IMG/VR virus record: IMGVR_UViG_3300044568_003163
Span: 1-64,000 of that record
Strand: one strand, 5' to 3'
Length of the DNA stretch: 64,000 nt
The translations under genes were made by a program, and so were the position numbers. Below, piece after piece: positions 15,119 through 61,780 of this stretch (position 1 is the stretch's first letter; every line of letters begins with the position of its first letter). The notes under the pieces are model-generated. The model saw only the letters and a program-made list of their open reading frames with translations. It was not told where the DNA came from and did no database searches.

Positions 15119-15131
15119 TGTTTGTTTTTCT

Positions 15132-27894: not shown

Positions 27895-30854
<2,960 letters not shown>

Positions 30855-30855
<1 letters not shown>

Positions 30856-31470: not shown

Positions 31471-31899
31471 TTATTGAATTCTTTTAGTTTTGTCTATTAA
31501 TTCAGGAAAAAAGAAGGACACTTCAGTAAGTGCATTTTCATCTGAATCAGAACCATGTATTGCATTCGAGGCTATAGACGAGCCATACATACTACGGATA
31601 GTTCCTGGATTAGCTAATTTAGGGTCAGTATCACCTATCAAAGTTCTAAAATCTTCGATTGCATTTGTTTTTTGTAGTGCAATTGCAACAATCGGTCCAG
31701 AAGTCATGAATTTTATTAGGTCATCGTAGAAATCCTTAGATTTATGAACTGAATAAAATTCCGCAGCTTTATCAGGAGTCAGCATAGTAACTTTCATTCC
31801 TACGGTTTTGAAACCTTCAAAGCTAATTCGTTGTATTAATTGATCTGCCGATGCAAATACATCCGGCTTAATCATGGTCAATGTGTATGTTCCTATCAT
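31471..31899 (-). CDS. ndk: Nucleoside-diphosphate kinase
   Basis: TLTMIKPD, FMTSGPIVAI, PGTIRSMYG, NAIHGSDS (catalytic His). Confidence 0.97.
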   Translation of the reverse strand: MIGTYTLTMIKPDVFASADQLIQRISFEGFKTVGMKVTMLTPDKAAEFYSVHKSKDFYDDLIKFMTSGPIVAIALQKTNAIEDFRTLIGDTDPKLANPGTIRSMYGSSIASNAIHGSDSDENALTEVSFFFPELIDKTKRIQ

Positions 31900-31902
31900 G
31901 AA

Positions 31903-32394
31903 TTATTTATCTTCGGAAAGATAAATCTTGCTGTACCAATCGAGTTTTAATTTTTCAATGTTACCATATTTGATTCCACATTCGTCAAAGATGTGAAGAT
32001 GTCCTTGTTCTCGGTAATCTTCTATCCAATAAACATATTTGAATCCCGAATTAACTAAGATTTTTGTACACATCTTACATGGAGAAAGAGTTAAGAGGAT
32101 GATGTAATTCTTTGGATCGAATTCTCGGAACTTAGCAATCATATTAACTTCGGCATGAATGAATCCGCTTTCACCTGGAATTAGGGAATCCTCTTCAGTT
32201 CCTGTTACTTCATTTATTGGTGCACCTTTGTAGGAGCCATTATAGCCAAAAGAAGCTATTTTTGTAAAGTTTTTGTGCAATGCCATACATGCAACTTTTT
32301 TAGTTGATGCATTAGATAATGTAGCTATTTGCTGAATCATACCAGCAAAGGTATCAATTTTAAAGTCTATTCTTTCTTGTGTCATTATTTCCAA
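31903..32394 (-). CDS. dCMP deaminase
   Basis: FGYNG, IHAEVNMI, TLSPCKMCTKIL zinc-deaminase motifs. Confidence 0.9.
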   Translation of the reverse strand: MEIMTQERIDFKIDTFAGMIQQIATLSNASTKKVACMALHKNFTKIASFGYNGSYKGAPINEVTGTEEDSLIPGESGFIHAEVNMIAKFREFDPKNYIILLTLSPCKMCTKILVNSGFKYVYWIEDYREQGHLHIFDECGIKYGNIEKLKLDWYSKIYLSEDK

Positions 32395-32978
32395 TCTGAA
32401 TTTACGAGTCGAGTCTTAATACTAATTCCTTTTATTTCTTTGCCTAAAGCATCGGCAATCTTAATGTTTTCTCTATCATCGTCATAGAAAATAAAATCTC
32501 TAAAACCTATTTTAATAAGTTCCATAAAAGCTTGTTTCTTTCTATCGGCAATTGAACCATCAAATCCATTGTTAGGATCAGAAACTGCAAAGATATATTT
32601 CGGATTGACGTCTACTCCATGATGAGATAGGAATTGATAAATTAAATCTTTGTCGTCTCTAGCAGTAATGATACCTACACGCCTTCCTCTTTGCATTGTT
32701 TTCTTAAGTACATTGAAAACTCGTTCTATTAACTTACCGGCTTTTAAGATTTCTAAATTTTTAAAATCGGAAAAATCCATTTCATGATGAGCGTGCTTTT
32801 CAAATTCATTGAATTCTGCAGGTGACAAGGTAAAAGTTTCACCGGTTTGACTATCATTAACTTTGATTTGTGAATTGGTAATTACCAATGTATCATCAAC
32901 GTCAAATATAGTAATCGCTTCGAATTTTTCTTTACGAGTCGGATCTACAAAATCCTGATATTTTAAAAATTTATTCAT
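32385..32978 (-). CDS. HAD-superfamily hydrolase
   Basis: TIFDVDDTLV (motif I), IITAR (motif II), FYDDDRENI (motif IV). Confidence 0.75.
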   Translation of the reverse strand: MNKFLKYQDFVDPTRKEKFEAITIFDVDDTLVITNSQIKVNDSQTGETFTLSPAEFNEFEKHAHHEMDFSDFKNLEILKAGKLIERVFNVLKKTMQRGRRVGIITARDDKDLIYQFLSHHGVDVNPKYIFAVSDPNNGFDGSIADRKKQAFMELIKIGFRDFIFYDDDRENIKIADALGKEIKGISIKTRLVNSDWK

Positions 32979-34528: not shown

Positions 34529-35071
34529 TTATCCGAAATATTCGTTTTCGAAGTATAACAACTCGAAGTTGTTTTCTGGGTTTATTAATTGTAGTGCATT
34601 TAAGAATCCTGCATACTCAGCAGTAGAAGATGTATTTTGCTTAACATAGTCTTGTAAGAATACGAAAGTAGCCATATCATTTAATCCAAAAATAGTTTTA
34701 GAATTTTCAGAATATGATTGAAGTAAACCATATTCCATGTCGTAAGCTTTTACGATGATGTCAGCCAAATTGTCGAAATTCATATCAGTCGTAACTGTAG
34801 GAATTGTAGGTTTAACATCCCAATCGGTCATATATTTTTGTAGACCTTGAGCATGAATTAGTTCATCTGTAGCTTCATTGTCAAAGAAAACAGCAGCTTT
34901 CTTATATTCCATGTTGTGGCACCAGTTAGCAGCACTACGATAGAAATAATGAGCAGTATATTCATCACCTATTCGTTGATTGATAAGTTTAACAACTTCA
35001 CTCCTAAGAGTATTAGGCTTTTTAACGATAGTTGGATCTACCGATTTAATTGATTCGTTTATGATATTCAT
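34529..35071 (-). CDS. Ferritin-like protein
   Basis: LINQRIGDEYTAHYFY, FFDNEATDELIHA (ExxH), AYDMEY, DMATFVFLQDYV four-helix ferritin pattern. Confidence 0.85.
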   Translation of the reverse strand: MNIINESIKSVDPTIVKKPNTLRSEVVKLINQRIGDEYTAHYFYRSAANWCHNMEYKKAAVFFDNEATDELIHAQGLQKYMTDWDVKPTIPTVTTDMNFDNLADIIVKAYDMEYGLLQSYSENSKTIFGLNDMATFVFLQDYVKQNTSSTAEYAGFLNALQLINPENNFELLYFENEYFG

Positions 35072-35104: not shown

Positions 35105-35665
35105 TTACATGTTGGCGTCTAGAACTTTTTTGAATGATTTAGCATCAGTAACTTCTTCTCCGTGCAATTCAATAGTTTCTCTATCCAAATTGATGTAGAT
35201 TTCTGAACCTTGATATTTCATATCTAAGATAATAGTGCTGTAGTTTTTTCCAATAGCTGTACCACCACTAATTCTTTTGCCTGCCTTTTCTGCCCATGTA
35301 GCAGCCTTTTTAACTAATGCAGTTGCATAGGAACCTTTACGTTTAGCAAATTCCATGATATTAGAAGGTACAGATGCAGCTTCATTAATTACAGATTCTT
35401 CTACTTTAAAAGTTTTGTTTCCTACTTTAACGGTTTTACCTATCAGATCATCAACACCATAAGGTTTTCCTAATTTGTCTTCGAAAGTTTGATCGTCTGA
35501 CCAATCATCAGGAGTTTGTAAAAGTTTTGCAATCACATCGGCTTTAGAAGACGATTCAGTTCTACCCCAGTTGTCGATAACCTCAGAGTAATAAACTATT
35601 TCGATTGCTCCTTCATTAACTGAAGATTCGTTAATGAATTCGTTGAATGTTTGTAAGTTTTTCAT
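35105..35665 (-). CDS. Putative internal head protein, two domains separated by an xNE site
   Basis: MKNLQTFNEFINESSVNE N-terminus; internal VEESVINE. Confidence 0.65.
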   Translation of the reverse strand: MKNLQTFNEFINESSVNEGAIEIVYYSEVIDNWGRTESSSKADVIAKLLQTPDDWSDDQTFEDKLGKPYGVDDLIGKTVKVGNKTFKVEESVINEAASVPSNIMEFAKRKGSYATALVKKAATWAEKAGKRISGGTAIGKNYSTIILDMKYQGSEIYINLDRETIELHGEEVTDAKSFKKVLDANM

Positions 35666-36054
35666 TATTGATCGATGAATTCTCCATTTAGGAATCTAAG
35701 TAGAATTTTATCAGTGGGTTGTACATTTAAGTTTCCGTTGATAAAAATCTCATAAGAATCATCAGCATATTTGCCGATGCCATAAAGCTCATTGGCTTTA
35801 GAGAATTTTTTATTTATATATTCATATGAGAACTTAATAATTCGCTGAGTTCTGACGTTATAAAATCCTAGAGTTCGGATATGTTCTCGGATTTCATTTT
35901 CATCGGCATTAAGAACCGATTGTGGACTAGGCCATTTGTCAAAAAATGAGTAAATTACCTTTCTAACATTTTTGTTGCCTGTTTGATTTAACATAATGCA
36001 ACCAATAAGCATTTTCCAGGGATCGTGTTGAAATTCTTGTTGAATAATTGCCAT
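35665..36054 (-). CDS. MBD4-like HhH-GPD DNA glycosylase
   Basis: DPWKMLIGCIMLNQT, LGFYNVR, HhH LYGIGKYADDSYEIF, and PTDK Asp at the MBD4 catalytic position. Confidence 0.85.
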   Translation of the reverse strand: MAIIQQEFQHDPWKMLIGCIMLNQTGNKNVRKVIYSFFDKWPSPQSVLNADENEIREHIRTLGFYNVRTQRIIKFSYEYINKKFSKANELYGIGKYADDSYEIFINGNLNVQPTDKILLRFLNGEFIDQ

Positions 36055-36061: not shown

Positions 36062-36700
36062 TTATGCTGATTTTTTTAATTTGATTTTCTTTTCAGGTAC
36101 CGGATTAGGTACATATTGAGAAACTGCTGAATTTACAAACTCCGAAGTCCACCATTCAGGTTGATTATTTAATTTGTTCCAGGAGACATTCATGTACGTC
36201 GTCTTGAACGCATAGTATTTTTTATAAGATATTACAGCATCACTAGATTGATAACAGATTGGCATCGCAGTGGCAAAAGGAGTAAGGCCTTTTGATATAA
36301 TGTTTGGTGGATTTAATTTCATCCAATCAATAATTAATTTAACCGAGTGTGGATTGTTTTTCCATCGATTAAGAAATTCTTGACAAAGTTCTTCTGTGCA
36401 TTCAATTAGCCAATTGAAATTTTCTTTAGATTCTCGAGTCCATATAGTGCATGGATGATTAACGTGACTGATTGCATATGGATGATCTGTGCCATCTGGA
36501 TGCTTTCTAGGCCAGCCTTTAAATATTTTACTAACTGCATCTTGATTTTCTGCAATTTCTTTCTTTTTGGAAATTCCTAACGTATGATAGTATGCAGCTG
36601 CTAACATTTGTGTGTGTTCGATTATCATTTTTGAAATGTGTTTATCGCAATGCATCTGTGCCGCAATTCTAGGATTTTCATCCAATACAAATATGTTCAT
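36062..36700 (-). CDS. Pyrimidine-dimer DNA glycosylase family protein
   Basis: MNIFVLD...HCDKHISKMIIEHTQML...HVNHPCTIWTRES...NFNWL. Start moved to ATG 36700, just downstream of a promoter cassette. Confidence 0.8.
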   Translation of the reverse strand: MNIFVLDENPRIAAQMHCDKHISKMIIEHTQMLAAAYYHTLGISKKKEIAENQDAVSKIFKGWPRKHPDGTDHPYAISHVNHPCTIWTRESKENFNWLIECTEELCQEFLNRWKNNPHSVKLIIDWMKLNPPNIISKGLTPFATAMPICYQSSDAVISYKKYYAFKTTYMNVSWNKLNNQPEWWTSEFVNSAVSQYVPNPVPEKKIKLKKSA

Positions 36701-36719
36701 TGTAGTTAATTTATTTAAA

Positions 36720-36777
36720 GTAAAAATAATCAAATTAATTGACAAGAAAAAATAAAGTGAGTAGAAGTTATTAACAA
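36720..36777 (-). promoter_or_regulatory. Early promoter cassette 2
   Basis: TGTTAATAA (36776-36768), 39 nt, TTGAT-TATTTTTAC. Confidence 0.65.
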
Positions 36778-36800
36778 AAAAGGAACTCAATAGAGTTCCT
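36776..36800 (-). terminator. Intrinsic terminator
   Basis: AGGAACTC-tatt-GAGTTCCT plus TTTTT running into cassette 2. Confidence 0.8.
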
Positions 36801-36829
36801 TAATGTGTGCTTCGATTTGTGTTTGTTAT

Positions 36830-37198
36830 TTAGCTATTTAGCTGTTGGTATTCTCCGGTTGTATCATTTACTTTAGCCAATGAATCAGCATAAAATTTTT
36901 GATATAATTTATCGAATCTTCTATCTATCTCAGATTTGAGATTGTCGATATTATTTTCTGTCGCTAAAGTATATTCTTCGATTCGTCTTCCTCGTTCATC
37001 GATATTAGATATTAAGCTTTCTTCAACTTCATCAATTTTACGTTGAGTGTCGTCGTGTAAGTGGTGCAAATCTAAAATTTGCTTTTCGTGAGTTATGTCG
37101 TTTTTTTGTGCCTTACGTATTCCTCTAACCATCCATATTTGCAGAATGACCAAAAGAGTTGCTAGTACGCTCAACACCGATATTAAAATTGGTTCCAT
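36830..37198 (-). CDS. Membrane-anchored coiled-coil protein
   Basis: N-terminal hydrophobic helix (ILISVLSVLATLLVILQIWMV) followed by heptad-rich sequence. Confidence 0.65.
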   Translation of the reverse strand: MEPILISVLSVLATLLVILQIWMVRGIRKAQKNDITHEKQILDLHHLHDDTQRKIDEVEESLISNIDERGRRIEEYTLATENNIDNLKSEIDRRFDKLYQKFYADSLAKVNDTTGEYQQLNS

Positions 37199-37233: not shown

Positions 37234-38379
37234 TTATTTTTTATTCATTTCAAAATCGATCATTTGTTTGATGGTTTCGTGTAATGATATTGTAATTCCT
37301 TTCCATTCTGGATAATCAGTTTTAAATTTAGTCAAATCTGAAATATACCAAATATGGTCACCAATTCGATTGTCTTCTAGAACTGTGAAGTCGTTCCAAT
37401 CTTTATGTTCTGGATTTATTTCTCTTAAGATAGAATTTGCCGAATCGATTGCTTCTAGAATCGAAGTTGAATTTTCTCTACCACCACCTGCATTATAGAC
37501 TGCACCAGGTATAGGGTTGTTATGATATTCTAAGAACATACTTACTAAGTCATCGGAATGGATATTATCTCTAACTTGTTTTCCTTTATAACCAAAGATG
37601 TTGTAATGTTTGTTGTTGACAATACACTTAATCAAATAAGCAAGAAATCCATGAAGTTCTGCACCTTGATGATTTGGTCCGGTTAAACAACCACCTCGAA
37701 ATACAACCGTATTCATACCAAAATATCTGCCATATTCTTGAACCATAATATCAGCAGCTACTTTAGAAGCACCAAAGATTGAATGTTTTGTATGGTCAAT
37801 CGACATAGTTTCGTCTACTTCTATTTGACGAGCAGATAGATTCGAAAGAGCTTCATAACGAGTTTCTTGTTCAACGATGTTTAATCGATTAGGAGTATCA
37901 CCATAAACTTTATTAGTTGATGTGAATATGAATGTAGCAGTTGGACAATATAAACGAGTAAGTTCTAACAGGTTCATTGTACCTATTGCATTTACTGAGA
38001 AGTCAGTCAAAGGTTCTTTTGCTGCCCAATCATGTGAAGGTTGTGCTGCAGTATGTACGATCATTTGAATATCATAAACTTCATGAGATTTGCCGAATAT
38101 TGTAAGTTCGCTATCTTCTAAAGTAAGGCCTTTGAAAATTGTTTCTAATGTTGCATAATCTCGAATATCGATAGACAATGGATTAAAGTTTGTTCCATAA
38201 TCTAATTTCATTTTATTTTCTGATTCTTTCGTAGAAGCATCTTCACCAAAGAAATAAGCTCGCATATCATTATCGATACCAACAACATAATAACCTTCAT
38301 TAATAAGACGTTTAACAGTTTGAGAACCTATCAAACCTGAAGATCCTGTAACAATTGCAGTTTTAACTTTATTTTGCAT
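37234..38379 (-). CDS. NAD-dependent NDP-sugar epimerase/dehydratase (CDP-tyvelose 2-epimerase-like extended SDR)
   Basis: VTGSSGLIG, HTAAQPSHD, FTSTNKVYGD, SIFGASKVAAD (catalytic Tyr position is Phe), FRGGCLTGPNHQGAELHGFL, GYKGKQVRDNIH, RIGDHIWYISD. Confidence 0.85.
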   Translation of the reverse strand: MQNKVKTAIVTGSSGLIGSQTVKRLINEGYYVVGIDNDMRAYFFGEDASTKESENKMKLDYGTNFNPLSIDIRDYATLETIFKGLTLEDSELTIFGKSHEVYDIQMIVHTAAQPSHDWAAKEPLTDFSVNAIGTMNLLELTRLYCPTATFIFTSTNKVYGDTPNRLNIVEQETRYEALSNLSARQIEVDETMSIDHTKHSIFGASKVAADIMVQEYGRYFGMNTVVFRGGCLTGPNHQGAELHGFLAYLIKCIVNNKHYNIFGYKGKQVRDNIHSDDLVSMFLEYHNNPIPGAVYNAGGGRENSTSILEAIDSANSILREINPEHKDWNDFTVLEDNRIGDHIWYISDLTKFKTDYPEWKGITISLHETIKQMIDFEMNKK

Positions 38380-38941
38380 TTTTTATAATTGAGTTTTTAA
38401 TTAAGAGTTTTTCGATTTCTACTATTGATTGTTCAATAGATTTTACAGATGAATCAATTTCGATAAATCGATTTTTCCATTTACCAGAATCCGAATGATT
38501 TTTGTAATAGTCATAATACCAATCGAACGAATCTTTTTGTTTAATAAAGTCGTTTTGAGAATAGATGATTCGATCTTTTGGTTTTCGTTCTACGTATTTT
38601 TCGTATGTAGTTGAAAGATAAATTATGGCAAAATTATTATCAAGGAGTAAATCACTTAATGAATCATCTTCTTTGATTAGAGATTTTCTTTCAAAGAATT
38701 TTGAGTAAACTAATTCAGAAAGAAAAGAACGATCTAAGATGAAAGTTTCTTCAGGAAATGCAGAGTACATCATATTAGCCATCACATGAATTCCGTGATA
38801 GAATTCATGTAAGTTTTCAATACATTCAGGCATTTTGTCTTTTACTGACATTTGACGGAATCCGTATTTTTTAGAAAGTATTTCTGCAATCGAAGATTTT
38901 CCTGTTCGAGAAAGTCCTTCAAGTATAATTAGTTTTGCCAT
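38369..38941 (-). CDS. dNMP (thymidylate-kinase-like) kinase
   Basis: IILEGLSRTGKSS P-loop and ILDRSFLSELVYS motif. Confidence 0.8.
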   Translation of the reverse strand: MAKLIILEGLSRTGKSSIAEILSKKYGFRQMSVKDKMPECIENLHEFYHGIHVMANMMYSAFPEETFILDRSFLSELVYSKFFERKSLIKEDDSLSDLLLDNNFAIIYLSTTYEKYVERKPKDRIIYSQNDFIKQKDSFDWYYDYYKNHSDSGKWKNRFIEIDSSVKSIEQSIVEIEKLLIKNSIIKNAK

Positions 38942-38963
38942 AATTGTTATATGATGAAATCGA

Positions 38964-40253
38964 TTATTTGGTTAAGCAAGTGCGAATATCATTTACAATT
39001 CTATCACATGCAGACTCATATGATTCGTGGTCATATCCTACTTTGTGACATAATTCTCGCATTTGAGTTTCGCCGATAGTGCCAATCGTATGTAATGCAG
39101 TTCTTAATTGATATGCAACATCTTTTACGTCGGGTTTGTGAGTATTAACAGAATCAATTTTCGTGAAGTAAGGATATTCAGCATGACCAGCTTTTATCAT
39201 TTTGTGCAGGTAGTTATTTACTCGAGGAAATACTAAAATGTTTTTTGCCATCATAGCTTCGCAATGAGTTACACCACCATGAACTTCAGTAACAAATAAA
39301 TTACAAGCAATATGGGTTTTGTTGATAAACCTTAAATAATCTTCTCGAGTAAATTTTTCGTTATTTGGCATTACTTCGACGTGACCTTTTGATAAATCAT
39401 TAATCAATTGTAATTGTTCATCAGTTACTTTACGAGTAGGATTTAACATTACAGCTCTGAAAGGTTTGTCGGTGATAGTAGATAAAATTCCAATTGCTTC
39501 GGCAAATGAATCGTAATTAGTGTAACGATTTGCAGTATCTGAAATTCGATTACCAAAGTAAATTGTAGGAATTTCAAATTTTTCATCGTTATGGTATTTT
39601 GCAATTTCTGCATAATGAGCACCTACACCCCATACTGACTGAGGAGCAAGTATTTCTCGAGTTTTAAATAGAATATCATAAGCTTCCATTGCTTCTACTC
39701 TACCAGCTTCACATTGAAATGCAGCAATATCAGATGCAATAAAAGATTCCATTTGTCTTTCGTAATAACGAATTTTCTGCGGAACTTTATTTGCAATAGG
39801 AGAATCTAAGAAATAATTTGTAGAAATGATTTTCACTTCTTTGTTTCCAATAGTTTCAAATGCAACTCGCCAATTTTTTGTTAATGTGTTTTCGTCATTA
39901 ATCATTACATCGACATGAGGAAATCTTACAAGATTTGTTTGATGGTAATCGAAGTTGAAATTGTAACGAGAGGTCACAGGAGAAATAGGAATAATGTCTT
40001 CGTAAATTTGAATTGATGAATGATATTTCTCATCAAATAATTCGTAAATGTCGATCACATCATCGCAATGACCTGCAGGTGGTAATTTTACAATGAAATG
40101 GAATTCGTTAGGATTTTGTTCTAATATGGTTGAAATTATACCAACCGCAATATTAGTACATGCATCGTTTCTTAATAACCATTGAGGATAACCATTTCGA
40201 TTAGTGAAATTAGAAACTTGAATTGCATAAAAGATTGTTGTTTTTTTATTCAT
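38964..40253 (-). CDS. GT-B fold glycosyltransferase (GT4 / T4 alpha-gt-like)
   Basis: IYFGNRIS, REDYLRFI, TEVHGGVTHCEAM (GT4-like E...E motif). Start moved to ATG 40253. Confidence 0.65.
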   Translation of the reverse strand: MNKKTTIFYAIQVSNFTNRNGYPQWLLRNDACTNIAVGIISTILEQNPNEFHFIVKLPPAGHCDDVIDIYELFDEKYHSSIQIYEDIIPISPVTSRYNFNFDYHQTNLVRFPHVDVMINDENTLTKNWRVAFETIGNKEVKIISTNYFLDSPIANKVPQKIRYYERQMESFIASDIAAFQCEAGRVEAMEAYDILFKTREILAPQSVWGVGAHYAEIAKYHNDEKFEIPTIYFGNRISDTANRYTNYDSFAEAIGILSTITDKPFRAVMLNPTRKVTDEQLQLINDLSKGHVEVMPNNEKFTREDYLRFINKTHIACNLFVTEVHGGVTHCEAMMAKNILVFPRVNNYLHKMIKAGHAEYPYFTKIDSVNTHKPDVKDVAYQLRTALHTIGTIGETQMRELCHKVGYDHESYESACDRIVNDIRTCLTK

Positions 40254-40257
40254 TAAA

Positions 40258-40983
40258 TTACATTTTAGAATAGTTAATAGTAGAGTGTGGTAGGTTTTGT
40301 ATGTAATCAAAATCCTTTTTGAAAACGTGAGCAGAAACTACAGACGAAGAAAATTTACCTGGTTCAACTTCTAGTTTTTCTGCTAATTCGCAAGTAAATC
40401 GACCCCATAAGTACATATCAAGCTTAAGGACTTGTGCCATATTTTGAGATCGCATATGAACATGAACATTTAGCTTTTCATCTCGGATAAAGAAAGTAGC
40501 AGAATCGGTACATGGAAATTCTAAAGATTCGTTTTTATCTAAAAGATTAAGGTCATCTTTATCGAGAATCATAATGACTGCTCTTCGAGTATCAGGTTTA
40601 TCTCGCAATTCCTTTTCGATTGTAGGTAATTGTGATAAAATACGAGGACCATAGAAGGTATTGAAGTTTTCTGGAAGTTGGTCAGACTTTGGCTTTTCCA
40701 TAAACTTAGTGACGTTTGGATATTTGTCGATAATTTCGGTTGAGTCTGTGCAACCGTTCATCATCCAACGATAAAAGGTATCAGCATAATCATAGTCTAA
40801 TTTACCAATCAACTCGTTCGTAAATTGATAACTGGTTAAATCGAGTACATCATAACTCAATCCTGTAATTTCATGTACTTCACCAATGCGAGAAGTAGTT
40901 TGAAATTCAGGATTGTCTATAATATGCTGAGAAGTTTGTAAGAAAGCTTCTTCAAAAGTTTCAAATGTAGAATATTTGTGCAT
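40258..40983 (-). CDS. Thymidylate-synthase-fold enzyme with dCMP-type specificity residue (dCMP hydroxymethylase-like)
   Basis: YGPRI, PDTRRAVI, FPCT (catalytic Cys), HMRSQNMAQVLKLD with Asp at the E. coli TS Asn177-equivalent position, SAHVF. Confidence 0.8.
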   Translation of the reverse strand: MHKYSTFETFEEAFLQTSQHIIDNPEFQTTSRIGEVHEITGLSYDVLDLTSYQFTNELIGKLDYDYADTFYRWMMNGCTDSTEIIDKYPNVTKFMEKPKSDQLPENFNTFYGPRILSQLPTIEKELRDKPDTRRAVIMILDKDDLNLLDKNESLEFPCTDSATFFIRDEKLNVHVHMRSQNMAQVLKLDMYLWGRFTCELAEKLEVEPGKFSSSVVSAHVFKKDFDYIQNLPHSTINYSKM

Positions 40984-41015: not shown

Positions 41016-41369
41016 CTATTTTGTATCAAGTAATTTTACTTTAGCAACACAAAGTTTTTCTTTGATTTTATCAGTTTTGATTTTACCAAATCTAGAGAAG
41101 ACCATTCGGGTCATATTAGGATTGATTCTATCCTTAATGATATTATCTAGTTCCTCACCTTTAATATTTGAATAAGTTCTCAATTCAAATCGATCTTCTT
41201 CAATGTGAGTTAACATAATTGAACCGTTCATAAAGAAAAGCCTTTTTGCAGTTTCGAAATCTTGCTTCAAAATGAAGTCGTTCATAAACTCGTTTTTCAT
41301 AGTCTTATTTAGTGTTAAGACTACCAATGATTCGTTAATGAACTCATCGTATTTTTTAAATGTGCTCAT
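41016..41369 (-). CDS. Putative internal head protein
   Basis: MSTFKKYDEFINES N-terminus. Confidence 0.55.
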   Translation of the reverse strand: MSTFKKYDEFINESLVVLTLNKTMKNEFMNDFILKQDFETAKRLFFMNGSIMLTHIEEDRFELRTYSNIKGEELDNIIKDRINPNMTRMVFSRFGKIKTDKIKEKLCVAKVKLLDTK

Positions 41370-42224: not shown

Positions 42225-43034
42225 TTATTTTGGTGTCCAAATCTTTTGAACTTTTTTATTTATATATTCAATGAGTTCGCTGAAATTAGGATCTAACGCC
42301 TGAGAGTCGAATGATTCTTTATTTGTAGAAAACGAAATCTTACCGTAAACTTCTCGAGTATCTAAATATTGAGATATTCCAGCTTTTCGCAAAGAATCTG
42401 AAAATATAACATACTCATATCTACCAGAATTATCGTCATATATAATATTAGGTAAAACTTCGTTCTTAACAAAGTATGTACAATGTACTACTGGAACTTG
42501 GATTAGTCCTTTATATTTTTGATATAATAATGTAGAGTACATATCATCATTTTCGAAATATCCATTGGTATCTATTGATGAATGGAAATTTGAGTACATA
42601 GAGTTAGAATCTACTGAATGCAATAAAGGTGCTACTACTGGTAAATTAGTGGCCATTAGAGAATTGATAGTATGAGGTTTGATTATATTATCACAATCTG
42701 CGATAAAATAATCTGCCTTTTCGCTCATGGCAAATTGAATAGAGTCTTGTCTAATTGCTCCTAATATTTTAAATCGATGAGTATTCCAATCGTGATTTTC
42801 TACTAACTTTAGGCTTTCATCTATCGATGAATCATCAAATACCATTTTCCATTTCCATTTCCACTTATTGTACCAATCAAATAAAACATTAGCAGTATCG
42901 TCGTTATTGTCGTTTGTTCGAATATAAAATACCGAGTCCCATCCAAGAGCAGTCTGAGCTAACATACTATCTAAATACAATGGTAGTATATGGGCTTTTG
43001 ATTTTGCGATAATAGGAATTACTAATCTACTCAT
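42225..43034 (-). CDS. GT-A glycosyltransferase resembling the N-terminal domain of procollagen galactosyltransferase COLGALT1
   Basis: IIAKSKAHILPLYL, IRTNDNNDDTANVLFDW, IRQDSI, ADYFIADCDNII (DxD), LPVVAPLL, YSNFH, GYF, VPVVHCTYFV occur in the same order as recalled COLGALT1 motifs. Confidence 0.75.
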   Translation of the reverse strand: MSRLVIPIIAKSKAHILPLYLDSMLAQTALGWDSVFYIRTNDNNDDTANVLFDWYNKWKWKWKMVFDDSSIDESLKLVENHDWNTHRFKILGAIRQDSIQFAMSEKADYFIADCDNIIKPHTINSLMATNLPVVAPLLHSVDSNSMYSNFHSSIDTNGYFENDDMYSTLLYQKYKGLIQVPVVHCTYFVKNEVLPNIIYDDNSGRYEYVIFSDSLRKAGISQYLDTREVYGKISFSTNKESFDSQALDPNFSELIEYINKKVQKIWTPK

Positions 43035-43450
43035 ATATGTTCTAGAATTTCAAGGTGAGCTTTAATCATTCTAGGTCTAGCCATTTCAAACGGCATAAAA
43101 CCAGCCCAATCAACTTCTGCAGCTTGTAATTGAGACTTAGGTATGATTTCGGATTGTAAACCTATTTGGTCTAATGATTTAATAGGTACAATATAATAAG
43201 TTAACTTCTTCCAGGGTTTTCCTGTTTTAGTTTTGATATAAAATAGCTCCATTTCTGGACCAATCAAATTTCGAGGAACATCAATACCAATTTCCTCTTT
43301 AGTTTCTCTGATTGCTGCTTCTATATTAGTTTCACCGGCATCAACATGACCTTTAGGGATCGAATAGGTTCCATACCATCTTCCATTAGTTGGATGAACT
43401 AATAAAATTTGGTCTTTATAGATTATTGCTAATCCTGACGAATGTTCCAT
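43031..43450 (-). CDS. Nudix hydrolase
   Basis: GHVDAGETNIEAAIRETKEEIG Nudix box. Confidence 0.92.
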   Translation of the reverse strand: MEHSSGLAIIYKDQILLVHPTNGRWYGTYSIPKGHVDAGETNIEAAIRETKEEIGIDVPRNLIGPEMELFYIKTKTGKPWKKLTYYIVPIKSLDQIGLQSEIIPKSQLQAAEVDWAGFMPFEMARPRMIKAHLEILEHI

Positions 43451-45451: not shown

Positions 45452-45895
45452 TTACTCGTTTCTTGCTATGTCTCTTGACACATCTCTAGATTTAATTGTT
45501 TCTCGTTTATCATATTCTTTTTTACCTTTAGCTAGAAAGATTTCCATTTTGAAAAGTCCTCTTTCATTTTGAAATATTTTATAAGGTACAATTGAGTGGC
45601 CTTTGATGAGGTCCTTTTGTAGCTTTTTAAGTTCTTGTTTTCGCAGCAACAATTTGCGGTTGCAATCCGGTTCGTGACTATTAGGCGAATTCTTTGCAAC
45701 TGGAATATGAAGGCCTCTGACGTAAAGCTCATCATTCTCAAAAATACAATAAGTATCAGTAAGTCCAGCTAATCCTAGTCGAATAGATTTTACTTCACTG
45801 CCTTTTAATTGTATACCTGCAATTTCTGACCTCAATAAGTGATAATCAAATTTAGCTTTTCGATTGATGACGTTTACGTCTTTGACTTTTTTCAT
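45452..45895 (-). CDS. smpB: SsrA-binding protein SmpB
   Basis: NRKAKFDYHLL, AGIQLKGSEVKSIR, ELYVRGLHI, RKLLLRKQE, LAKGKKEYDKRETIK. Confidence 0.97.
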   Translation of the reverse strand: MKKVKDVNVINRKAKFDYHLLRSEIAGIQLKGSEVKSIRLGLAGLTDTYCIFENDELYVRGLHIPVAKNSPNSHEPDCNRKLLLRKQELKKLQKDLIKGHSIVPYKIFQNERGLFKMEIFLAKGKKEYDKRETIKSRDVSRDIARNE

Positions 45896-46368
45896 TATTT
45901 TAAAAATTTTCTAATTGATGAATTTAATCTCTCTAGATGTTCTTCATTTTGCAAACCAGCAAATTTCGTAACATTATCAGATATAAAAGGAATACAAATC
46001 TTTTTATTAAATACTTCTGCACCTATCCATTCAAGAATAGTGTCTAATTGAGTTATTCCTAAAATATTACCAAATGAGGTATTTGATGTACCTATTAGCA
46101 ATATGTTGGTTCCTTTAAGTGTTGATGGATATCCGGAATTATCTATCAATTGCTTAAACATATAAGGAAATGATCCGTTCCATTCAGGAACTATCATAAT
46201 GATATGTGTGAAATCTTTCATGTTAGGAATATCATCAGTAGCATTTGCTAAAGTAATAATACTTGTCGCACCTTTAAATATTTCGTATTGTATGAAAGAC
46301 TCACAACCTAAGGACAGCTTATAATTTAAGCCGTCCTTTGATGATTGTGTGAGTATGAGTATTTTCAT
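45895..46368 (-). CDS. NADPH-dependent FMN reductase (flavodoxin-like)
   Basis: IVPEWNGSFPYMFKQLID motif; TSNTSFGNILGITQL. Confidence 0.8.
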   Translation of the reverse strand: MKILILTQSSKDGLNYKLSLGCESFIQYEIFKGATSIITLANATDDIPNMKDFTHIIMIVPEWNGSFPYMFKQLIDNSGYPSTLKGTNILLIGTSNTSFGNILGITQLDTILEWIGAEVFNKKICIPFISDNVTKFAGLQNEEHLERLNSSIRKFLK

Positions 46369-47378
46369 TATTTTTTATCAGCACCACCGATGTTCATCAT
46401 AACGGATTGTCCACTACCCATCATATAAGTAGGTAAGGCACCATCCCATTTTTGAATCCATTCTAATTGAATAATCTTAGGATTAGTCGAGATAGAGTTA
46501 CCTTTGATTTGTAACGCTTTAGCTTCACCTTCAGCTTTTTCGATTGCAATGTTTTTATCGATTTGAGCTTGTTTTAAGGCTTCATCTTTTTGACGAGTAA
46601 TTTGTACCATTGTAAGTACTTTTTGCTCTTCTAATTTCTTTTGATTAATGGAAGCTTCATATTGTTTGTTGTAGAATACCTCTCTAATTTGAGCAACATC
46701 AACAATTATACGATTAGCCGCTAATTCTTTTTGTAGAGCTGCTTGCATTTTCGCTTGAATTTCTGCTCTTTTATCAGAGTAACAATCAATTGGTGTATAT
46801 CGAGAAACCGTTAATGGCATAATAGATTTGATAGCCGGTCTAATGATATTTTCTTCAATCCAATGATATTTACCGGTAGCATCATCTGTACCAGAAGAAA
46901 TATTTGAATAAATCCAAGAAGCTTCTTTAGGATCGATATGCCAGTTAATAGAAACATCGAATCCCATTTTGATACCATCAGAGGTTGGAGCCCAAATAGC
47001 ATCATCAGCCTGTTTAGCACCTTCTCCTTCAGTACCTGATAATGTATATACCCAAACAGTTTTGTCCATCAATTGAACTTGATTATAAGGAGCTACTAAG
47101 TGCCAACCAGTAGTTAGCTCATCTGGATCTACTCCAGCAGGTGTAACTACAACTCCTACTTCTTGTGCATCAATTTTGTATAATGTCATAGACAATAATA
47201 CTGAAACTGCGAAAACGATTGTACTAATTAATAGTGTAAGTTTTCCTGCAGGAAATTGCATGACTTCGTCATAATTTTTAGGATCAGCCTCATGTTTGGC
47301 GTTGATTCTAGATTGGATCGTTCCAATAATTCCATAAATAAGTCCTAATGCGGACGCAATAATTAAAAATGTTAACAT
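46368..47378 (-). CDS. SPFH/band-7 membrane protein
   Basis: Two N-terminal TM helices, KIDAQEVGVVV...GWHLVAPY, C-terminal AEGEAKA...IQKWDGALP. Confidence 0.9.
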   Translation of the reverse strand: MLTFLIIASALGLIYGIIGTIQSRINAKHEADPKNYDEVMQFPAGKLTLLISTIVFAVSVLLSMTLYKIDAQEVGVVVTPAGVDPDELTTGWHLVAPYNQVQLMDKTVWVYTLSGTEGEGAKQADDAIWAPTSDGIKMGFDVSINWHIDPKEASWIYSNISSGTDDATGKYHWIEENIIRPAIKSIMPLTVSRYTPIDCYSDKRAEIQAKMQAALQKELAANRIIVDVAQIREVFYNKQYEASINQKKLEEQKVLTMVQITRQKDEALKQAQIDKNIAIEKAEGEAKALQIKGNSISTNPKIIQLEWIQKWDGALPTYMMGSGQSVMMNIGGADKK

Positions 47379-47860: not shown

Positions 47861-48349
47861 TTAAAAGTTATGGTCTGTTAATCGAACGTCAAAATCTGTA
47901 AAATTTGCAAAGTCCTTTTCATCGGCTTCTAATCTTCGTTCTACTGTATCAGCATCACTTCGTAATGCTAATCTATCTTTTCGGATATCAAGTGCAATAT
48001 CGATGTAAATGATGAACGAATTTTTTCGATCAGCTGCATGTAATTTACTAATTCCGGAAGGCGTCATGATAAACACGTCATCAGTTAAGTGGAATTGTGA
48101 ATTTGAAGTTCCATAATTCCAACCATTAAATGAAACATGTTCATAGAAGAACTTTTGTTCAATCATCGTTTGGAACTCATTATCTTCTAAGAAGTAATAA
48201 TCTCTGCCATCAACTTCACCATCTCTTGGAGGTCGAGTTGTATAAGAAACTCCATAACGATAACCTCTGCCTTCTAGGATTTTTCGCAAATGGTCTTTGC
48301 CGGATGCGGCTTTACCGCAAAGTATAATTCTGGATTTTGTACCTGTCAT
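47861..48349 (-). CDS. gmk: Guanylate kinase-like protein
   Basis: GKAASGKD, SYTTRPPRDGEVDGRDYYF, YGTS motifs. Confidence 0.88.
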   Translation of the reverse strand: MTGTKSRIILCGKAASGKDHLRKILEGRGYRYGVSYTTRPPRDGEVDGRDYYFLEDNEFQTMIEQKFFYEHVSFNGWNYGTSNSQFHLTDDVFIMTPSGISKLHAADRKNSFIIYIDIALDIRKDRLALRSDADTVERRLEADEKDFANFTDFDVRLTDHNF

Positions 48350-55354: not shown

Positions 55355-55824
55355 CCTCTTCGTTTATTATTTCTCTTAATTAAATGGGCATACGACCAAA
55401 TACCTTCATTGGTAAAATTAGTTGGTGCCCATTTGTTCATATCTAATGAAATCCACTCTTCGGTGCCGTCTTTGTTATTTGCAATATACATATGGATTTC
55501 GTCAACTAAAGACTCGAATTGTTTAAATAGAGAGGTGCCACCTAAAACATAAATTGGTCCTTCTGTGTGCAAGTGTAAATCATCCGTATCATGAATTACG
55601 TTTACATTCATTCGCTTCCATTTTCTATTTCTGGTAATCACCCACGTATTACCACCTTTCCATTTAGTAATATCATAGGTTTTTCTTCCAATCAAACATA
55701 CCTCTTTCTTGAGTAAATCTCTAATCAAACATTCATGATGCCAAATCCTTAATCCAAGGTCTGGTACAGTATTTGATTGGTTATCTACTATTGCAACAAA
55801 TATGATTTTTTGATTGTGTAGCAT
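55351..55824 (-). CDS. Divergent dihydrofolate reductase-like protein
   Basis: [27 protein letters not shown]...DEIHM; the N-terminal IG..N.LPW motif is absent. Confidence 0.65.
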
Positions 55825-59033: not shown

Positions 59034-59810
59034 TTAAGAATCTTTTTTCATACTTGATAATTTTGAATAAATTCTTTGTGCAATCATTTTTGTATCAGAA
59101 GGCATTTCTGCTTTCTCATATATCCATCTTAAATATTCCTGATCTTCGGCAAATATAGCTTGAACTGTTTTGCCTGAATGTTTACCAAAAGTCAAAGTAA
59201 CTTCACCAGCTTCATTCTTTGCAAACTTACCAGAAAGGTCGAGTTTTTTGTCTAGTCCAGTAGTTTCATTATGAAGGTGGTCGAATTCAGTTTCATCAAA
59301 CCACATTTCCATTTGTTTGAAAAATATGCCAGCAGTTGCAGTTACATCAGCTTCTGCACTATGTGCATTTTGCAAATCAATTCCTAAGAAACGATTAACT
59401 GCGCCTTTAAGGTTACGGGTTTCATATTGAGTCCAGATTCTATATGAATCTAAAATTCTGCGCTTTCTATAATCAAAAAGCTTTTTAGCTCTCAAAAATT
59501 CCTCGAATATTAAAGGAATATCATAATGCAAAATGTTATAGCCACCTAAATCAGAATCACCTAAAAATTCTAAAATCGAATCGGCAATATCTGCAAATGT
59601 AGGAGAGTCCTTAACATCTTCGTTTGTAATTCCATGAACAGCCGAAACTTCTTCTGAAATATTAATGGTTGGATTTACTAAAGAATAGAATTTGTCAGTA
59701 GTTCCATCTGGATTGTACTTAATAATACAAATCTCGACGATTCGATCTTTTGTTGTGCTCAATCCTGTGGTTTCCACATCAAAGAACGATATTGGCTTTT
59801 GTAATGTCAT
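59034..59810 (-). CDS. DEDDh 3'-5' exonuclease (DnaQ-like) with C-terminal FGKH domain
   Basis: FFDVETTG, GYNILHYD, AHSAEADV; LTFGKHSGK...YLRWI. Confidence 0.9.
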   Translation of the reverse strand: MTLQKPISFFDVETTGLSTTKDRIVEICIIKYNPDGTTDKFYSLVNPTINISEEVSAVHGITNEDVKDSPTFADIADSILEFLGDSDLGGYNILHYDIPLIFEEFLRAKKLFDYRKRRILDSYRIWTQYETRNLKGAVNRFLGIDLQNAHSAEADVTATAGIFFKQMEMWFDETEFDHLHNETTGLDKKLDLSGKFAKNEAGEVTLTFGKHSGKTVQAIFAEDQEYLRWIYEKAEMPSDTKMIAQRIYSKLSSMKKDS

Positions 59811-61248: not shown

Positions 61249-61273
61249 AATAGTTATATGCAATTATTTCTAT

Positions 61274-61779: not shown

Positions 61780-61780
61780 A

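What the first reader, a model, noticed from the sequence alone, without database searches (positions are those of the whole stretch)
37234..40983. Candidate new DNA hypermodification pathway: TS homolog + GT-B glycosyltransferase + dNMP kinase + NDP-sugar epimerase
Seen: four contiguous co-oriented genes. Established: T-even phages modify dCMP with a TS-fold enzyme, phosphorylate it with a dedicated kinase and glycosylate the base in DNA, and arabinosylating phages add their own sugar-synthesis genes. Here the sugar enzyme resembles the CDP-tyvelose 2-epimerase subfamily (SIFGASK with Phe at the SDR catalytic Tyr position), not UDP-Glc/Gal epimerases. Inference: the genome carries a C5-substituted cytosine bearing an unusual, non-glucose sugar to evade restriction and CRISPR nucleases. 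dCMP deaminase, NDK, Nudix and the MBD4-like enzyme nearby fit nucleotide-pool remodelling.
Basis: partly seen in the sequence, partly recalled or inferred. Interest (0 to 1): 0.85.

Follow-up and report, generated by a model that had tools for sequence, protein, structure and literature searches.

The report
Sugar-coated 5-hydroxycytosine DNA cassette in jumbo phage
A giant phage known only from metagenomes carries a tight four-gene cassette that most likely swaps its DNA cytosines for 5-hydroxycytosine and attaches a still-unknown sugar; this kind of anti-restriction chemistry was described in 2025-26, but here it uses a new sugar-transferase family and an odd sugar-tailoring enzyme.

Summary
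Four co-oriented, almost abutting minus-strand genes lie at 37234-40983: a thymidylate-synthase (TS) homolog, a GT-B glycosyltransferase, a Tmk-like kinase, and a CDP-tyvelose-2-epimerase-like SDR with FxxxK in place of YxxxK.

The interpretation needs updating. The TS homolog is not a T4-type dCMP hydroxymethylase. It is 49% identical to RB69 gp48, a verified flavin-dependent 5-hydroxy-dCMP synthase, against 25% to T4 gp42. It carries the published diagnostic D169N signature together with L143E and N177D.

The order TS, GT, Tmk-like kinase matches the characterised glycosyl-5-hydroxycytosine clusters of RB69, DLP3 and RL38J1. The kinase is a profile-level homolog of RB69 gp45.

Three things are new:
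- The host lineage is a 294-kb Bacteroidota-type jumbo myovirus known only from metagenomes.
- The GT belongs to a small GT-B family with no Pfam or PHROG model. It has about 160 clusters among 1.8 billion representatives, and wherever neighbours could be read it sits beside nucleotide- or DNA-modification genes.
- The SDR has phenylalanine at the catalytic tyrosine position in all 120 nearest homologs. This points to a sugar other than arabinose, galactose or glucose, but its identity is unresolved.

Verdict: a new variant of a known kind, of moderate interest. Nothing here is biochemically shown.

The parts
40258..40983 (-). TS-superfamily enzyme, predicted flavin-dependent 5-hydroxy-dCMP synthase (dCMP to 5hodCMP)
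   Evidence: It hits Pfam Thymidylat_synt. The best solved structures are 9iqu/9iqc/9ir2 at E 1.4e-72, while T4 dCMP hydroxymethylase 1b49 scores only 8.6e-7. It is 49% identical to RB69 gp48 and 25% to T4 gp42. By alignment it has E143, C146, N169 and D177 in E. coli ThyA numbering. D169N is the published diagnostic residue for this activity.
38964..40253 (-). GT-B fold glycosyltransferase of an unnamed family, predicted first sugar transferase acting on 5-hydroxycytosine in DNA
   Evidence: It has no Pfam, PHROG or NCBIfam hit. The AF2 model has pLDDT 89. Foldseek matches BshA, GlgM, sucrose-phosphate synthase, OtsA and PglA at E about 1e-12. The family has only 162 clusters at E<=1e-3 among 1.84 billion representatives. 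Neighbours of its relatives are TS homologs, Tmk-like kinases, UDG, dUTPase, dCMP deaminase and U32 proteins.
38369..38941 (-). Compact Tmk-like P-loop nucleotide kinase, a homolog of RB69 gp45 and DLP3 gp78; inferred 5hodCMP kinase
   Evidence: It hits phrog_761 at E 1.2e-16. hhalign against RB69 gp45, PhT2 gp005 and Bp7 gp146 gives probability 98%, E 2.4e-13. The control against E. coli Tmk gives 63%, E 7e-5. It has a P-loop GLSRTGKS and an ILDRS motif.
37234..38379 (-). Extended SDR of the CDP-tyvelose 2-epimerase type with FxxxK in place of YxxxK; predicted NDP-sugar tailoring enzyme
   Evidence: The best PDB hits are 1orr and 9rl0 at E about 1e-28, with F aligned to the catalytic Y. The motifs GxxGxxG and STNKVYG and the catalytic Lys are intact. 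All 120 nearest homologs have HS[ILV]FGASK and STNKVYG.
36830..37198 (-). 122-aa protein with an N-terminal hydrophobic helix, last gene before the terminator; role unknown
   Evidence: ORF. It has a weak phrog_1625 hit. tblastn at E<=1e-5 found no homolog in the related loci.
36780..36801 (-). Terminator-like hairpin (9-bp stem followed by a T-run) that probably ends the transcription unit
41016..41369 (-). Conserved 117-aa protein immediately upstream of the TS homolog; function unknown
   Evidence: It is present upstream of the TS homolog in L002, L003, L012, L015 and L017 at 48-62% identity. The AF2 model has pLDDT 74, and no fold match has E<0.09.
35665..36054 (-). MBD4-like HhH-GPD DNA glycosylase, a conserved neighbour; inferred repair of deaminated modified cytosine opposite G
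   Evidence: It matches the MBD4 glycosylase domain (PDB 3iho and others) at E 1e-26, with GKYADDSY aligned to GKYGNDSY. It is conserved downstream of the cassette in L003, L012, L015, L016 and L017.
36062..36790 (-). phrog_624 protein, a conserved neighbour of unknown role
   Evidence: It hits phrog_624 at E 1.9e-49 and Pyr_excise weakly at E 0.0018. It is syntenic in six loci. No PDB sequence match was found.
42225..43034 (-). GT-A glycosyltransferase (PF13704-like, collagen galactosyltransferase-like); either a second DNA sugar transferase or a glycosylase of the phage's collagen-like fibres
   Evidence: It matches the N-terminal domain of procollagen galactosyltransferase 1 in the PDB at E 1.7e-19. 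Its Atlas neighbours are PF13704. Its ortholog sits between the GT and the kinase in L018.
31471..32394 (-). NDK (31471-31899) and dCMP deaminase (31903-32394); plausible pool enzymes (5hodCDP to 5hodCTP; dCMP to dUMP)
   Evidence: Pfam NDK E 1.9e-45 and dCMP_cyt_deam_1 E 1.5e-13. The deaminase is syntenic in relatives.
45895..46368 (-). FMN-reductase/flavodoxin-like protein; a lead only, as a possible supplier of reduced flavin to the hydroxylase
   Evidence: Pfam FMN_red E 4.6e-6. The PDB match 3u7r is only E 0.013. It is syntenic in relatives.

Best explanation
The cassette is a glycosyl-5-hydroxycytosine DNA hypermodification module. The proposed steps are:

1. The TS homolog uses its catalytic cysteine, a flavin and O2 to hydroxylate dCMP at C5, giving 5-hydroxy-dCMP. 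This is inferred from homology and active-site signature.
2. The Tmk-like kinase, then NDK, raise it to the triphosphate (inferred).
3. The phage polymerase incorporates it in place of dC (inferred).
4. After replication, the GT-B enzyme transfers a sugar from an NDP-sugar onto the 5-hydroxyl in DNA. This is inferred from gene order and family-wide neighbourhood.
5. The TyvE-like SDR converts a host NDP-hexose into the non-host donor sugar. This is the weakest step.

The MBD4-like glycosylase next door probably removes deaminated modified cytosines paired with G. The expected pay-off is resistance to restriction and CRISPR nucleases, as shown for the RB69 and DLP3 systems.
For: TS typing:
- 49% identity to the experimentally verified RB69 gp48, against 25% to T4 gp42.
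- Best PDB match 9iqu/9iqc at E 1e-72.
- E143, C146, N169 and D177 by alignment. Lee et al. 2026 showed that every D169N homolog they tested makes 5hodC.

Architecture:
- The order TS, GT, Tmk-like kinase is the same as PhT2 gp003-004-005, RB69 gp48-47/46-45, and DLP3 gp80-79-78 and RL38J1 gp216-215-214.
- Spacers are 4 nt, 22 nt and an 11-nt overlap.

Kinase: hhalign probability 98%, E 2.4e-13 to the gp45 group, against 63% to E. coli Tmk.

GT:
- Confident GT-B model, with the same PDB neighbours (BshA 3mbo, sucrose-phosphate synthase) that are reported for the RB69 and DLP3 DNA arabinosyltransferases.
- Every relative at >=44% identity whose locus holds a TS homolog has the N169 type.
- Distant relatives sit beside T4-type TS homologs, UDG, dUTPase, dCMP deaminase and Tmk-like kinases.

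SDR: NAD-binding and TyvE motifs are intact, and it is under strong conservation.
Against: - There is no biochemistry and no cultured isolate. tblastn of the GT against 50,697 phage genomes found nothing.
- The GT shows no sequence similarity to the known first arabinosyltransferases, so its acceptor is inferred only from context.
- The SDR lacks the canonical catalytic Tyr. Lineages L016 and L019/L020 keep TS, GT and kinase without it, so it may be dispensable, or it may serve another glycan. Its 61%-identical homolog in huge phage LR745206 lies in a deoxysugar/GT11 cluster with no TS homolog nearby.
- No clear dCTPase is present in the window. The Nudix gene is not syntenic in relatives.
- In T4-like phages the gp1-type dNMP kinase, not the Tmk-like protein, was shown to phosphorylate 5hodCMP, so the Tmk-like kinase's true role is open.
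Confidence: 0.65

Rival explanations
1. This is a T4-type system. The TS homolog is a folate-dependent dCMP hydroxymethylase, and the GT glycosylates 5-hydroxymethylcytosine.
For: Many database records annotate close homologs as 'dCMP hydroxymethylase'. L143E and N177D are shared with T4 gp42. Distant members of the same GT family do sit beside T4-type TS homologs, in L023 and L027.
Against: N169 replaces the D169 that T4 gp42 and the L023 and L027 homologs retain. Identity is 25% to T4 gp42 against 49% to the verified hydroxylase RB69 gp48. The PDB E-value is 1e-72 for the RB69-like structure against 9e-7 for T4.
Confidence: 0.07
2. The GT-B enzyme and the SDR glycosylate something other than DNA, such as virion proteins (for example the collagen-like fibres) or a host surface glycan. 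On this view they lie next to the nucleotide genes only by genome packing.
For: The top viral structural neighbours are generic phage GTs. The phage encodes two collagen-repeat proteins and a collagen-galactosyltransferase-like GT-A 1.2 kb upstream. The SDR's homolog in LR745206 lies in a polysaccharide-type sugar cluster.
Against: The GT is wedged between the TS homolog and the kinase with spacers of 4 nt and 22 nt. That placement persists from 100% down to 44% GT identity. GT relatives at about 26% identity, or detectable only by profile, still neighbour TS homologs, Tmk-like kinases, UDG, dUTPase and dCMP deaminase. The gene order is identical to three characterised DNA-glycosylating systems.
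Confidence: 0.15
3. The base is 5-hydroxycytosine and the GT acts on DNA, but the SDR is a non-catalytic or unrelated passenger. The GT simply uses an abundant host NDP-sugar such as UDP-glucose, so the sugar is ordinary.
For: The catalytic Tyr of the SDR triad is Phe. L016 and L019/L020 have TS, GT and kinase without this SDR. No nucleotidyltransferase is present in the cassette.
Against: The SDR overlaps the kinase gene by 11 nt. It is retained next to the kinase in six loci. Its 120 nearest homologs are >=71% identical, with NAD-binding, STNKVYG and Lys motifs intact, which argues for selection on an enzymatic function. Own knowledge, not tested here: some active extended SDRs of the CapE type naturally lack the Tyr.
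Confidence: 0.2

Closest known systems
Glycosyl-5-hydroxycytosine systems of Escherichia phage RB69 (gp48, gp46:47, gp45), Acinetobacter phage DLP3 (gp80, gp79, gp78) and Rhizobium phage RL38J1 (gp216, gp215, gp214); Lee et al., NAR 2026, PMC13326640
   Same: The TS homolog has the D169N, N177D and L143E signature and is 49% identical to RB69 gp48. The gene order TS, GT-B transferase, compact Tmk-like kinase is the same. The kinase is homologous at profile level. The GT has the same fold class and the same PDB neighbours (BshA, sucrose-phosphate synthase).
   Different: The GT belongs to a different sequence family: 429 aa against about 300-315 aa, with no detectable similarity. There are no arabinose-5-P isomerase, kinase/uridylyltransferase or phosphatase genes, and no UDP-galactopyranose mutase. 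Instead there is a TyvE-like SDR with FxxxK. The host lineage is a 294-kb Bacteroidota-type jumbo myovirus, not Straboviridae or Pootjesviridae. An MBD4-like glycosylase is a conserved neighbour.
T4 glucosyl-5-hydroxymethylcytosine pathway (gp42 dCMP hydroxymethylase, gp1 dNMP kinase, alpha- and beta-glucosyltransferases)
   Same: The logic is the same: a TS-fold enzyme modifies dCMP, kinases raise it to the triphosphate, and glycosylation follows replication. In both genomes the TS-fold gene lies next to a GT gene.
   Different: T4 gp42 keeps D169 and is only 25% identical. The T4 GTs are unrelated in sequence. T4 uses host UDP-glucose and has no sugar-tailoring enzyme. The predicted linkage here is an ether to C5-OH, not to a hydroxymethyl group.
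CDP-tyvelose 2-epimerase (RfbE/TyvE; PDB 1orr, 9rl0)
   Same: It is the best solved-structure match (E about 1e-28). The STNKVYG motif and the GKQVRD block are shared (the latter), as are the extended-SDR NAD-binding motifs.
   Different: The catalytic Tyr of YxxxK is Phe in the phage enzyme and in all 120 nearest homologs. There is an extra insertion after the second Rossmann strand (DNDMRAYFFGE...). The nucleotide carrier and the reaction are unknown.

Membership tests
[quoted passage not shown] | TS fold and the catalytic Cys (E. coli C146) | tested here: met
   Pfam PF00303 E 2.6e-10. C146 is aligned in EFPCT.
[quoted passage not shown] | Asn at the position of E. coli ThyA D169 (the published diagnostic), together with N177D and L143E/D | tested here: met
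   The window has E143, N169 and D177, like RB69 gp48. T4 gp42 has D143, D169 and D177. The criterion comes from PMC13326640.
[quoted passage not shown] | Closer to verified hydroxylases than to hydroxymethylases | tested here: met
   49% identity, E 8e-86 to RB69 gp48. 25% identity, E 4e-12 to T4 gp42. PDB 9iqu 1e-72 against 1b49 9e-7.
[quoted passage not shown] | Flavin binding and O2-dependent formation of 5hodCMP | not testable with these tools
   This needs expression followed by LC-MS and UV-Vis, as in PMC13326640.
T4-type dCMP hydroxymethylase | Asp retained at the ThyA D169 position; close similarity to gp42 | tested here: not met
   N169 is present and identity is only 25%.
RB69/DLP3/RL38J1-type glycosyl-5hoC gene cluster | The triad TS homolog, glycosyltransferase, Tmk-like nucleotide kinase, adjacent and in that order | tested here: met
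   Window order and spacers. References: PhT2, RB69, Table 1 of PMC13326640.
RB69/DLP3/RL38J1-type glycosyl-5hoC gene cluster | Kinase homologous to RB69 gp45 / DLP3 gp78 | tested here: met
   hhalign probability 98%, E 2.4e-13 over 142 columns. Control against E. coli Tmk: probability 63%.
RB69/DLP3/RL38J1-type glycosyl-5hoC gene cluster | First GT homologous in sequence to the arabinosyltransferase-1 family (RB69 gp46:47, PhT2 gp004) | tested here: not met
   hhalign probability 0.3% against PhT2 gp004 and Bp7 gp144. Only the GT-B fold class is shared.
RB69/DLP3/RL38J1-type glycosyl-5hoC gene cluster | Dedicated dCTP-clearing enzyme (dCTPase) | tested here: inconclusive
   Only a generic Nudix gene (43031-43450) was found in the window, and it is not syntenic in relatives. 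The other 230 kb of the genome were not examined.
RB69/DLP3/RL38J1-type glycosyl-5hoC gene cluster | Glycosylated 5hoC actually present in virion DNA | not testable with these tools
   There is no isolate, so nucleoside LC-MS/MS is needed.
GT-B fold, GT4-like glycosyltransferases | Two Rossmann-like domains that superpose on solved GT-B enzymes | tested here: met
   AF2 pLDDT 89, pTM 0.89. Foldseek E 1e-12 to 1e-10 and TM up to 0.75 to BshA, GlgM, PglA and OtsA.
GT-B fold, GT4-like glycosyltransferases | The EX7E motif and a Pfam Glycos_transf_1 match | tested here: inconclusive
   No Pfam hit. The invariant pair E323 and E332 gives an E-x8-E spacing rather than E-x7-E.
CDP-tyvelose 2-epimerase-like extended SDR | The GxxGxxG NAD motif and the STNKVYG Ser/Thr motif, with TyvE as the closest solved structures | tested here: met
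CDP-tyvelose 2-epimerase-like extended SDR | The catalytic YxxxK | tested here: not met
   FGASK in the window, in LR745206, in L002 and L003, and in all 120 nearest homologs. It therefore cannot be filed as a bona fide TyvE.
MBD4-type HhH-GPD mismatch glycosylase (neighbour gene 35665-36054) | Full-length similarity to the MBD4 glycosylase domain, including the Asp in the GKYxxDSY motif | tested here: met
   PDB 3iho E 9.7e-27 over residues 3-119, with D aligned. That this Asp is the catalytic residue is from my own knowledge.

The most novel reading that the evidence does not exclude
This jumbo-phage lineage decorates 5-hydroxycytosine with a sugar not yet seen on DNA. The sugar would be made by a Tyr-less TyvE-like SDR that uses a non-canonical catalytic mechanism, and installed by a previously unrecognised family of DNA glycosyltransferases. 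That family serves both 5-hydroxy- and 5-hydroxymethyl-cytosine systems across many uncultured phages.
Probability: 0.35. Interest if true: 0.7.

Novelty: new variant of a known kind. Interest (0 to 1): 0.55.

Why it matters
Glycosylated 5-hydroxycytosine was recognised only in 2025-26, and only in Straboviridae and Pootjesviridae isolates. This locus extends that chemistry to large uncultured phages whose nearest cultured relatives infect mostly Bacteroidota.

It also supplies a candidate new DNA-glycosyltransferase family that current profile libraries miss. That gives a usable marker for finding hypermodified phage genomes in metagenomes.

It points to further sugar diversity as well. Relatives add GDP-mannose dehydratase, GT11, GT2 and UDP-glucose dehydrogenase genes.

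The naturally Tyr-less SDR is a small enzymological puzzle. Such modifications matter in practice because they block restriction enzymes, CRISPR nucleases and some sequencing chemistries.

Tried and rejected
- Megablast of the 6-kb region, and tblastn of the GT, against 50,697 phage genomes found no match. No cultured relative carries this GT.
- A profile search of the GT family against PDB sequences gave nothing at E<=10. Only structure comparison revealed the fold.
- Profile comparison of the GT with the PhT2 and Bp7 arabinosyltransferase-1 proteins showed no similarity.
- The isoelectric point was tried as a proxy for DNA binding and is uninformative. The window GT has pI 6.0, T4 beta-GT has 9.05, but the PhT2 and Bp7 homologs of arabinosyltransferase 1 have 4.7-4.8.
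- The HAD phosphatase at 32385-32978 shows no relation to the RB69 gp51 sugar phosphatase.
- The conserved 117-aa upstream protein gave an AF2 model with pLDDT 74 but no significant fold match.
- The phrog_624 neighbour has no PDB sequence match.
- The FMN-reductase-like gene has only weak support and is kept as a lead, not as a part of the pathway.
- Literature searches for a TyvE-like enzyme in phage DNA modification found nothing. The supplements of PMC13326640 are not held, so I could not check whether one of their nine IMG/VR TS homologs comes from this lineage.
- The promoter scan was not above the shuffled expectation.
- None of the four genes has an internal stop.

Full report
**What is there**

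Between 37234 and 40983 the minus strand carries four ORFs in a row:
- a 241-aa thymidylate-synthase (TS) homolog at 40258-40983;
- a 429-aa protein at 38964-40253;
- a 190-aa P-loop kinase at 38369-38941;
- a 381-aa extended SDR at 37234-38379.

The mechanical ORF for the second gene starts at a TTG at 40310. All 33 aligned homologs begin at the ATG at 40253.

The genes are packed tightly. There are 4 nt between the TS stop and the next ATG, 22 nt before the kinase, and an 11-nt overlap between kinase and SDR. The only terminator-like hairpin downstream of the four genes lies at 36801-36780, after one more small gene.

The window is part of IMGVR_UViG_3300044568_003163, a 294,034-bp viral contig with about 32% G+C. 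A large structural protein finds its best cultured relatives in jumbo myoviruses of Tenacibaculum, Chryseobacterium, Flavobacterium and Sphingomonas, and in the huge uncultured phages of the LR7565xx series. No sequenced isolate has DNA or GT similarity to the cassette.

**The TS homolog is a 5-hydroxy-dCMP synthase type, not a T4-type hydroxymethylase**

tblastn places it about 51% identical to the 'gp42-like' proteins of Acinetobacter, Dhakavirus and related Straboviridae. In the PDB the best matches are 9iqu, 9iqc and 9ir2 (E 1.4e-72). T4 dCMP hydroxymethylase (1b49) scores only 8.6e-7.

Lee et al. (NAR 2026, PMC13326640) showed that RB69 gp48 and DLP3 gp80 make 5-hydroxy-dCMP using a flavin and O2. 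They also showed that Asn at the position of E. coli ThyA D169 is diagnostic: every D169N homolog they tested made 5-hydroxy-dC.

I aligned E. coli ThyA, T4 gp42, RB69 gp48, PhT2 gp003 and Bp7 gp145 with the window protein.
- The window protein has E143, C146, N169 and D177, identical in pattern to RB69 gp48.
- T4 gp42 has D143, C146, D169 and D177.
- Pairwise identity is 49% to RB69 gp48 (E 8e-86) and 25% to T4 gp42.

The predicted base is therefore 5-hydroxycytosine.

**The gene order is that of the known glycosyl-5-hydroxycytosine clusters**

In PhT2 the order is TS homolog (gp003), glycosyltransferase (gp004), 'thymidylate kinase' (gp005). In RB69 it is gp48, gp47/46, gp45. Table 1 of PMC13326640 gives DLP3 gp80-79-78 and RL38J1 gp216-215-214.

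The window kinase is weakly similar to PhT2 gp005, Bp7 gp146 and RB69 gp45 in pairwise BLAST (E 5e-8, 1e-6 and 2e-5). A nine-sequence profile of the window kinase and its orthologs matches those three sequences as a group at hhalign probability 98%, E 2.4e-13 over 142 columns. The same profile against E. coli Tmk reaches only 63%, E 7e-5. The kinase is thus a member of the gp45-type 'nucleotide kinase' group.

The exact role of that group is not established in the literature. In RB69 the separate gp1-type dNMP kinase was the enzyme shown to phosphorylate 5hodCMP. Assigning 5hodCMP phosphorylation to the window kinase is my inference.

**The second gene is a GT-B glycosyltransferase of a distinct, small family**

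It has no Pfam, PHROG or NCBIfam hit and no PDB sequence hit even as a profile. An AlphaFold2 model built from 34 homologs is confident (pLDDT 89, pTM 0.89). It matches retaining GT-B/GT4 enzymes at Foldseek E 1e-12 to 1e-10: BshA, GlgM, sucrose-phosphate synthase, OtsA, PglA and MshA. Those are the same neighbours reported for the RB69 and DLP3 DNA arabinosyltransferases.

It is nevertheless not detectably similar in sequence to PhT2 gp004 or Bp7 gp144, and it is about 115-130 residues longer.

An exhaustive profile search of 1.84 billion representative proteins found only 162 clusters at E<=1e-3. This is a narrow family, not a fringe of the huge GT4 superfamily.

**Context across the family supports a DNA-base acceptor**

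Window-like relatives:
- Six loci keep the order TS, GT, kinase, F-type SDR at 49-72% GT identity: L002, L003, L012, L015, L017 and L018. Some have insertions between GT and kinase.
- L016 and L019/L020 (44-52% GT identity) keep TS, GT and kinase without the SDR. Their TS homologs are only 30-33% identical to the window's but still have E143, N169 and D177.
- L014 has the SDR, the GT and the kinase, with no TS homolog in the part of the contig that could be read.

Remote GT relatives:
- L023 (26% GT identity): dUTPase_2, UDP-glucose dehydrogenase, a Tyr-containing SDR, a Tmk-like kinase, a cytidylyltransferase-like protein, a UDG-family protein, the GT, and a TS homolog of the T4 type with D143, D169 and D177.
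- L027: the GT, an SDR, and a TS homolog 54% identical to T4 gp42.
- L026 and the P0257 contig: a UDG-family gene beside the GT.
- L025: a Tmk-like kinase, the GT, a nucleoside deoxyribosyltransferase, a U32 protein and a dCMP deaminase.
- L024: no informative neighbours.

The family therefore travels with C5-cytosine-modifying enzymes of both flavours. The window's branch goes with the hydroxylase flavour. This is guilt by association, not proof. Still, it is hard to reconcile with a role in capsid, fibre or LPS glycosylation.

**The SDR**

The best solved structures are CDP-tyvelose 2-epimerases 1orr and 9rl0 (E about 1e-28). The query's HSIFGASK aligns to HSPYGCSK, which puts Phe at the catalytic Tyr.

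The NAD motif (TGSSGLIGS), the TyvE-type STNKVYG motif and the Lys are intact. All 120 nearest database homologs (71-100% identity) have HS[I/L/V]FGASK and STNKVYG, so the Phe is a fixed trait and not an error.

A 61%-identical copy in the 635-kb phage LR745206 also has Phe. There it sits among a PseB-like dehydratase, a formyltransferase, a sugar C-methyltransferase, an RmlD-like reductase and a GT11, with no TS homolog within 10 kb.

Some relatives of the window cassette add further sugar genes:
- L003 and L015 carry a second, Tyr-containing TyvE-like SDR.
- L003 carries a GT11.
- L015 carries a GDP-mannose 4,6-dehydratase and a GT2.

I conclude that the SDR is a sugar-nucleotide enzyme under strong selection and that the cassette family is 'glycodiverse'. 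The reaction, the nucleotide carrier and hence the sugar cannot be called from sequence. Lineages without the SDR show that it is not obligatory for the GT.

**Neighbours**

- The 129-aa HhH-GPD protein at 35665-36054 is a close match to the MBD4 glycosylase domain (E 1e-27 to 1e-26), with the Asp of GKYxxDSY conserved. It and the phrog_624 protein at 36062-36790 are syntenic with the cassette in five or six loci. MBD4 removes deaminated (modified) cytosines opposite G; that is my own knowledge. A repair role for deaminated 5-hydroxycytosine is a reasonable inference.
- The 269-aa protein at 42225-43034 is a GT-A related to the N-terminal domain of procollagen galactosyltransferase 1 (E 1.7e-19). 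Its ortholog lies inside the cassette in L018. The phage also has two collagen-repeat proteins, so its target is ambiguous.
- NDK and dCMP deaminase fit nucleotide-pool remodelling.
- The Nudix gene is not syntenic in relatives.
- An FMN-reductase-like gene at 45895-46368 is a tempting supplier of reduced flavin, but its support is weak.

**Mechanism, with status of each step**

1. dCMP to 5hodCMP by the TS homolog. Strong inference from homology and signature.
2. Phosphorylation by the Tmk-like kinase and NDK. Inferred.
3. Incorporation by the phage polymerase. Inferred by analogy.
4. Post-replicative transfer of a sugar to the 5-OH by the GT-B enzyme. Inferred from order and family context. 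On-DNA glycosylation was shown for DLP3, not here.
5. Donor sugar supplied by the SDR from a host NDP-hexose. Weakest step.

**Novelty and score**

The kind of system is known. I found no paper that describes it in this lineage, with this GT family, or with a TyvE-like SDR.

I rate it a new variant of a known kind, with interest 0.55. It does offer a new DNA-GT family marker, a probable new DNA sugar and a Tyr-less SDR worth testing.

Noticed in passing
L019:6129-7187 and L025:4814-5896: Peptidase_U32-family genes sit beside the TS homolog (L019) or beside the GT, a dCMP deaminase and a deoxyribosyltransferase with no TS homolog detected in the 7-kb contig (L025). RB69 also has a U32 protein (gp50) in its cluster. 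From my own knowledge, U32 proteins include O2-independent hydroxylases that make 5-hydroxy-pyrimidines in RNA, so they might offer an anaerobic route to 5-hydroxycytosine.
   Followed up: partly
L003:9287-11266; L015:9287-10333 and 12145-15241: Relatives insert extra sugar genes into the cassette: a second, Tyr-containing TyvE-like SDR, a GT11 (fucosyltransferase family), a GDP-mannose 4,6-dehydratase (Pfam E 1.8e-124) and a GT2. This suggests di- or oligosaccharide decorations that differ between lineages.
   Followed up: partly
L023:5282-6004, L026:96-647, and the contig of P0257: A UDG-superfamily gene lies next to, or one small gene upstream of, distant members of the GT family in three independent contigs. 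In L023 a T4-type (D169) TS homolog follows the GT, and UDP-glucose dehydrogenase and dUTPase_2 genes lie upstream.
   Followed up: partly
window 27895-30855 (-), 52373-55354 (+), 42225-43034 (-): There are two roughly 990-aa proteins with collagen triple-helix repeats, plus a GT-A related to procollagen galactosyltransferase 1. The phage may glycosylate its own collagen-like fibres.
   Followed up: partly
window 45452-45895 (-): The phage encodes an SmpB (Pfam E 4.7e-43). ARAGORN found no tmRNA gene in the window.
   Followed up: partly
window 63592-63675 and 63803-63877 (-): Two tRNA-Leu genes (anticodons AAG and TAA) lie at the window edge.
   Followed up: no
window 60021-62269 (-): Two HAD_SAK_2 domain proteins (the 'Swiss Army Knife' RNA-repair HAD domain) lie next to a calcineurin-like phosphoesterase. 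An RNase T/ExoX-like exonuclease is at 59034-59810.
   Followed up: no
window 55351-55824 (-), 34529-35071 (-), 46368-47378 (-), 47861-48349 (-): The window also holds DHFR-like, ferritin-like, SPFH/Band-7 and guanylate-kinase genes, the auxiliary metabolism typical of very large phages. The DHFR-like gene is notable because the predicted hydroxylase uses flavin rather than folate.
   Followed up: no
L001 (LR745206.1 426856-447950): The 635-kb uncultured phage carries an elaborate deoxysugar cluster: a PseB-like dehydratase, a polysaccharide deacetylase, a formyltransferase, a sugar C-methyltransferase, an RmlD-like reductase, the F-type SDR, a GT11 and a methyltransferase. No TS homolog lies within 10 kb.
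   Followed up: partly
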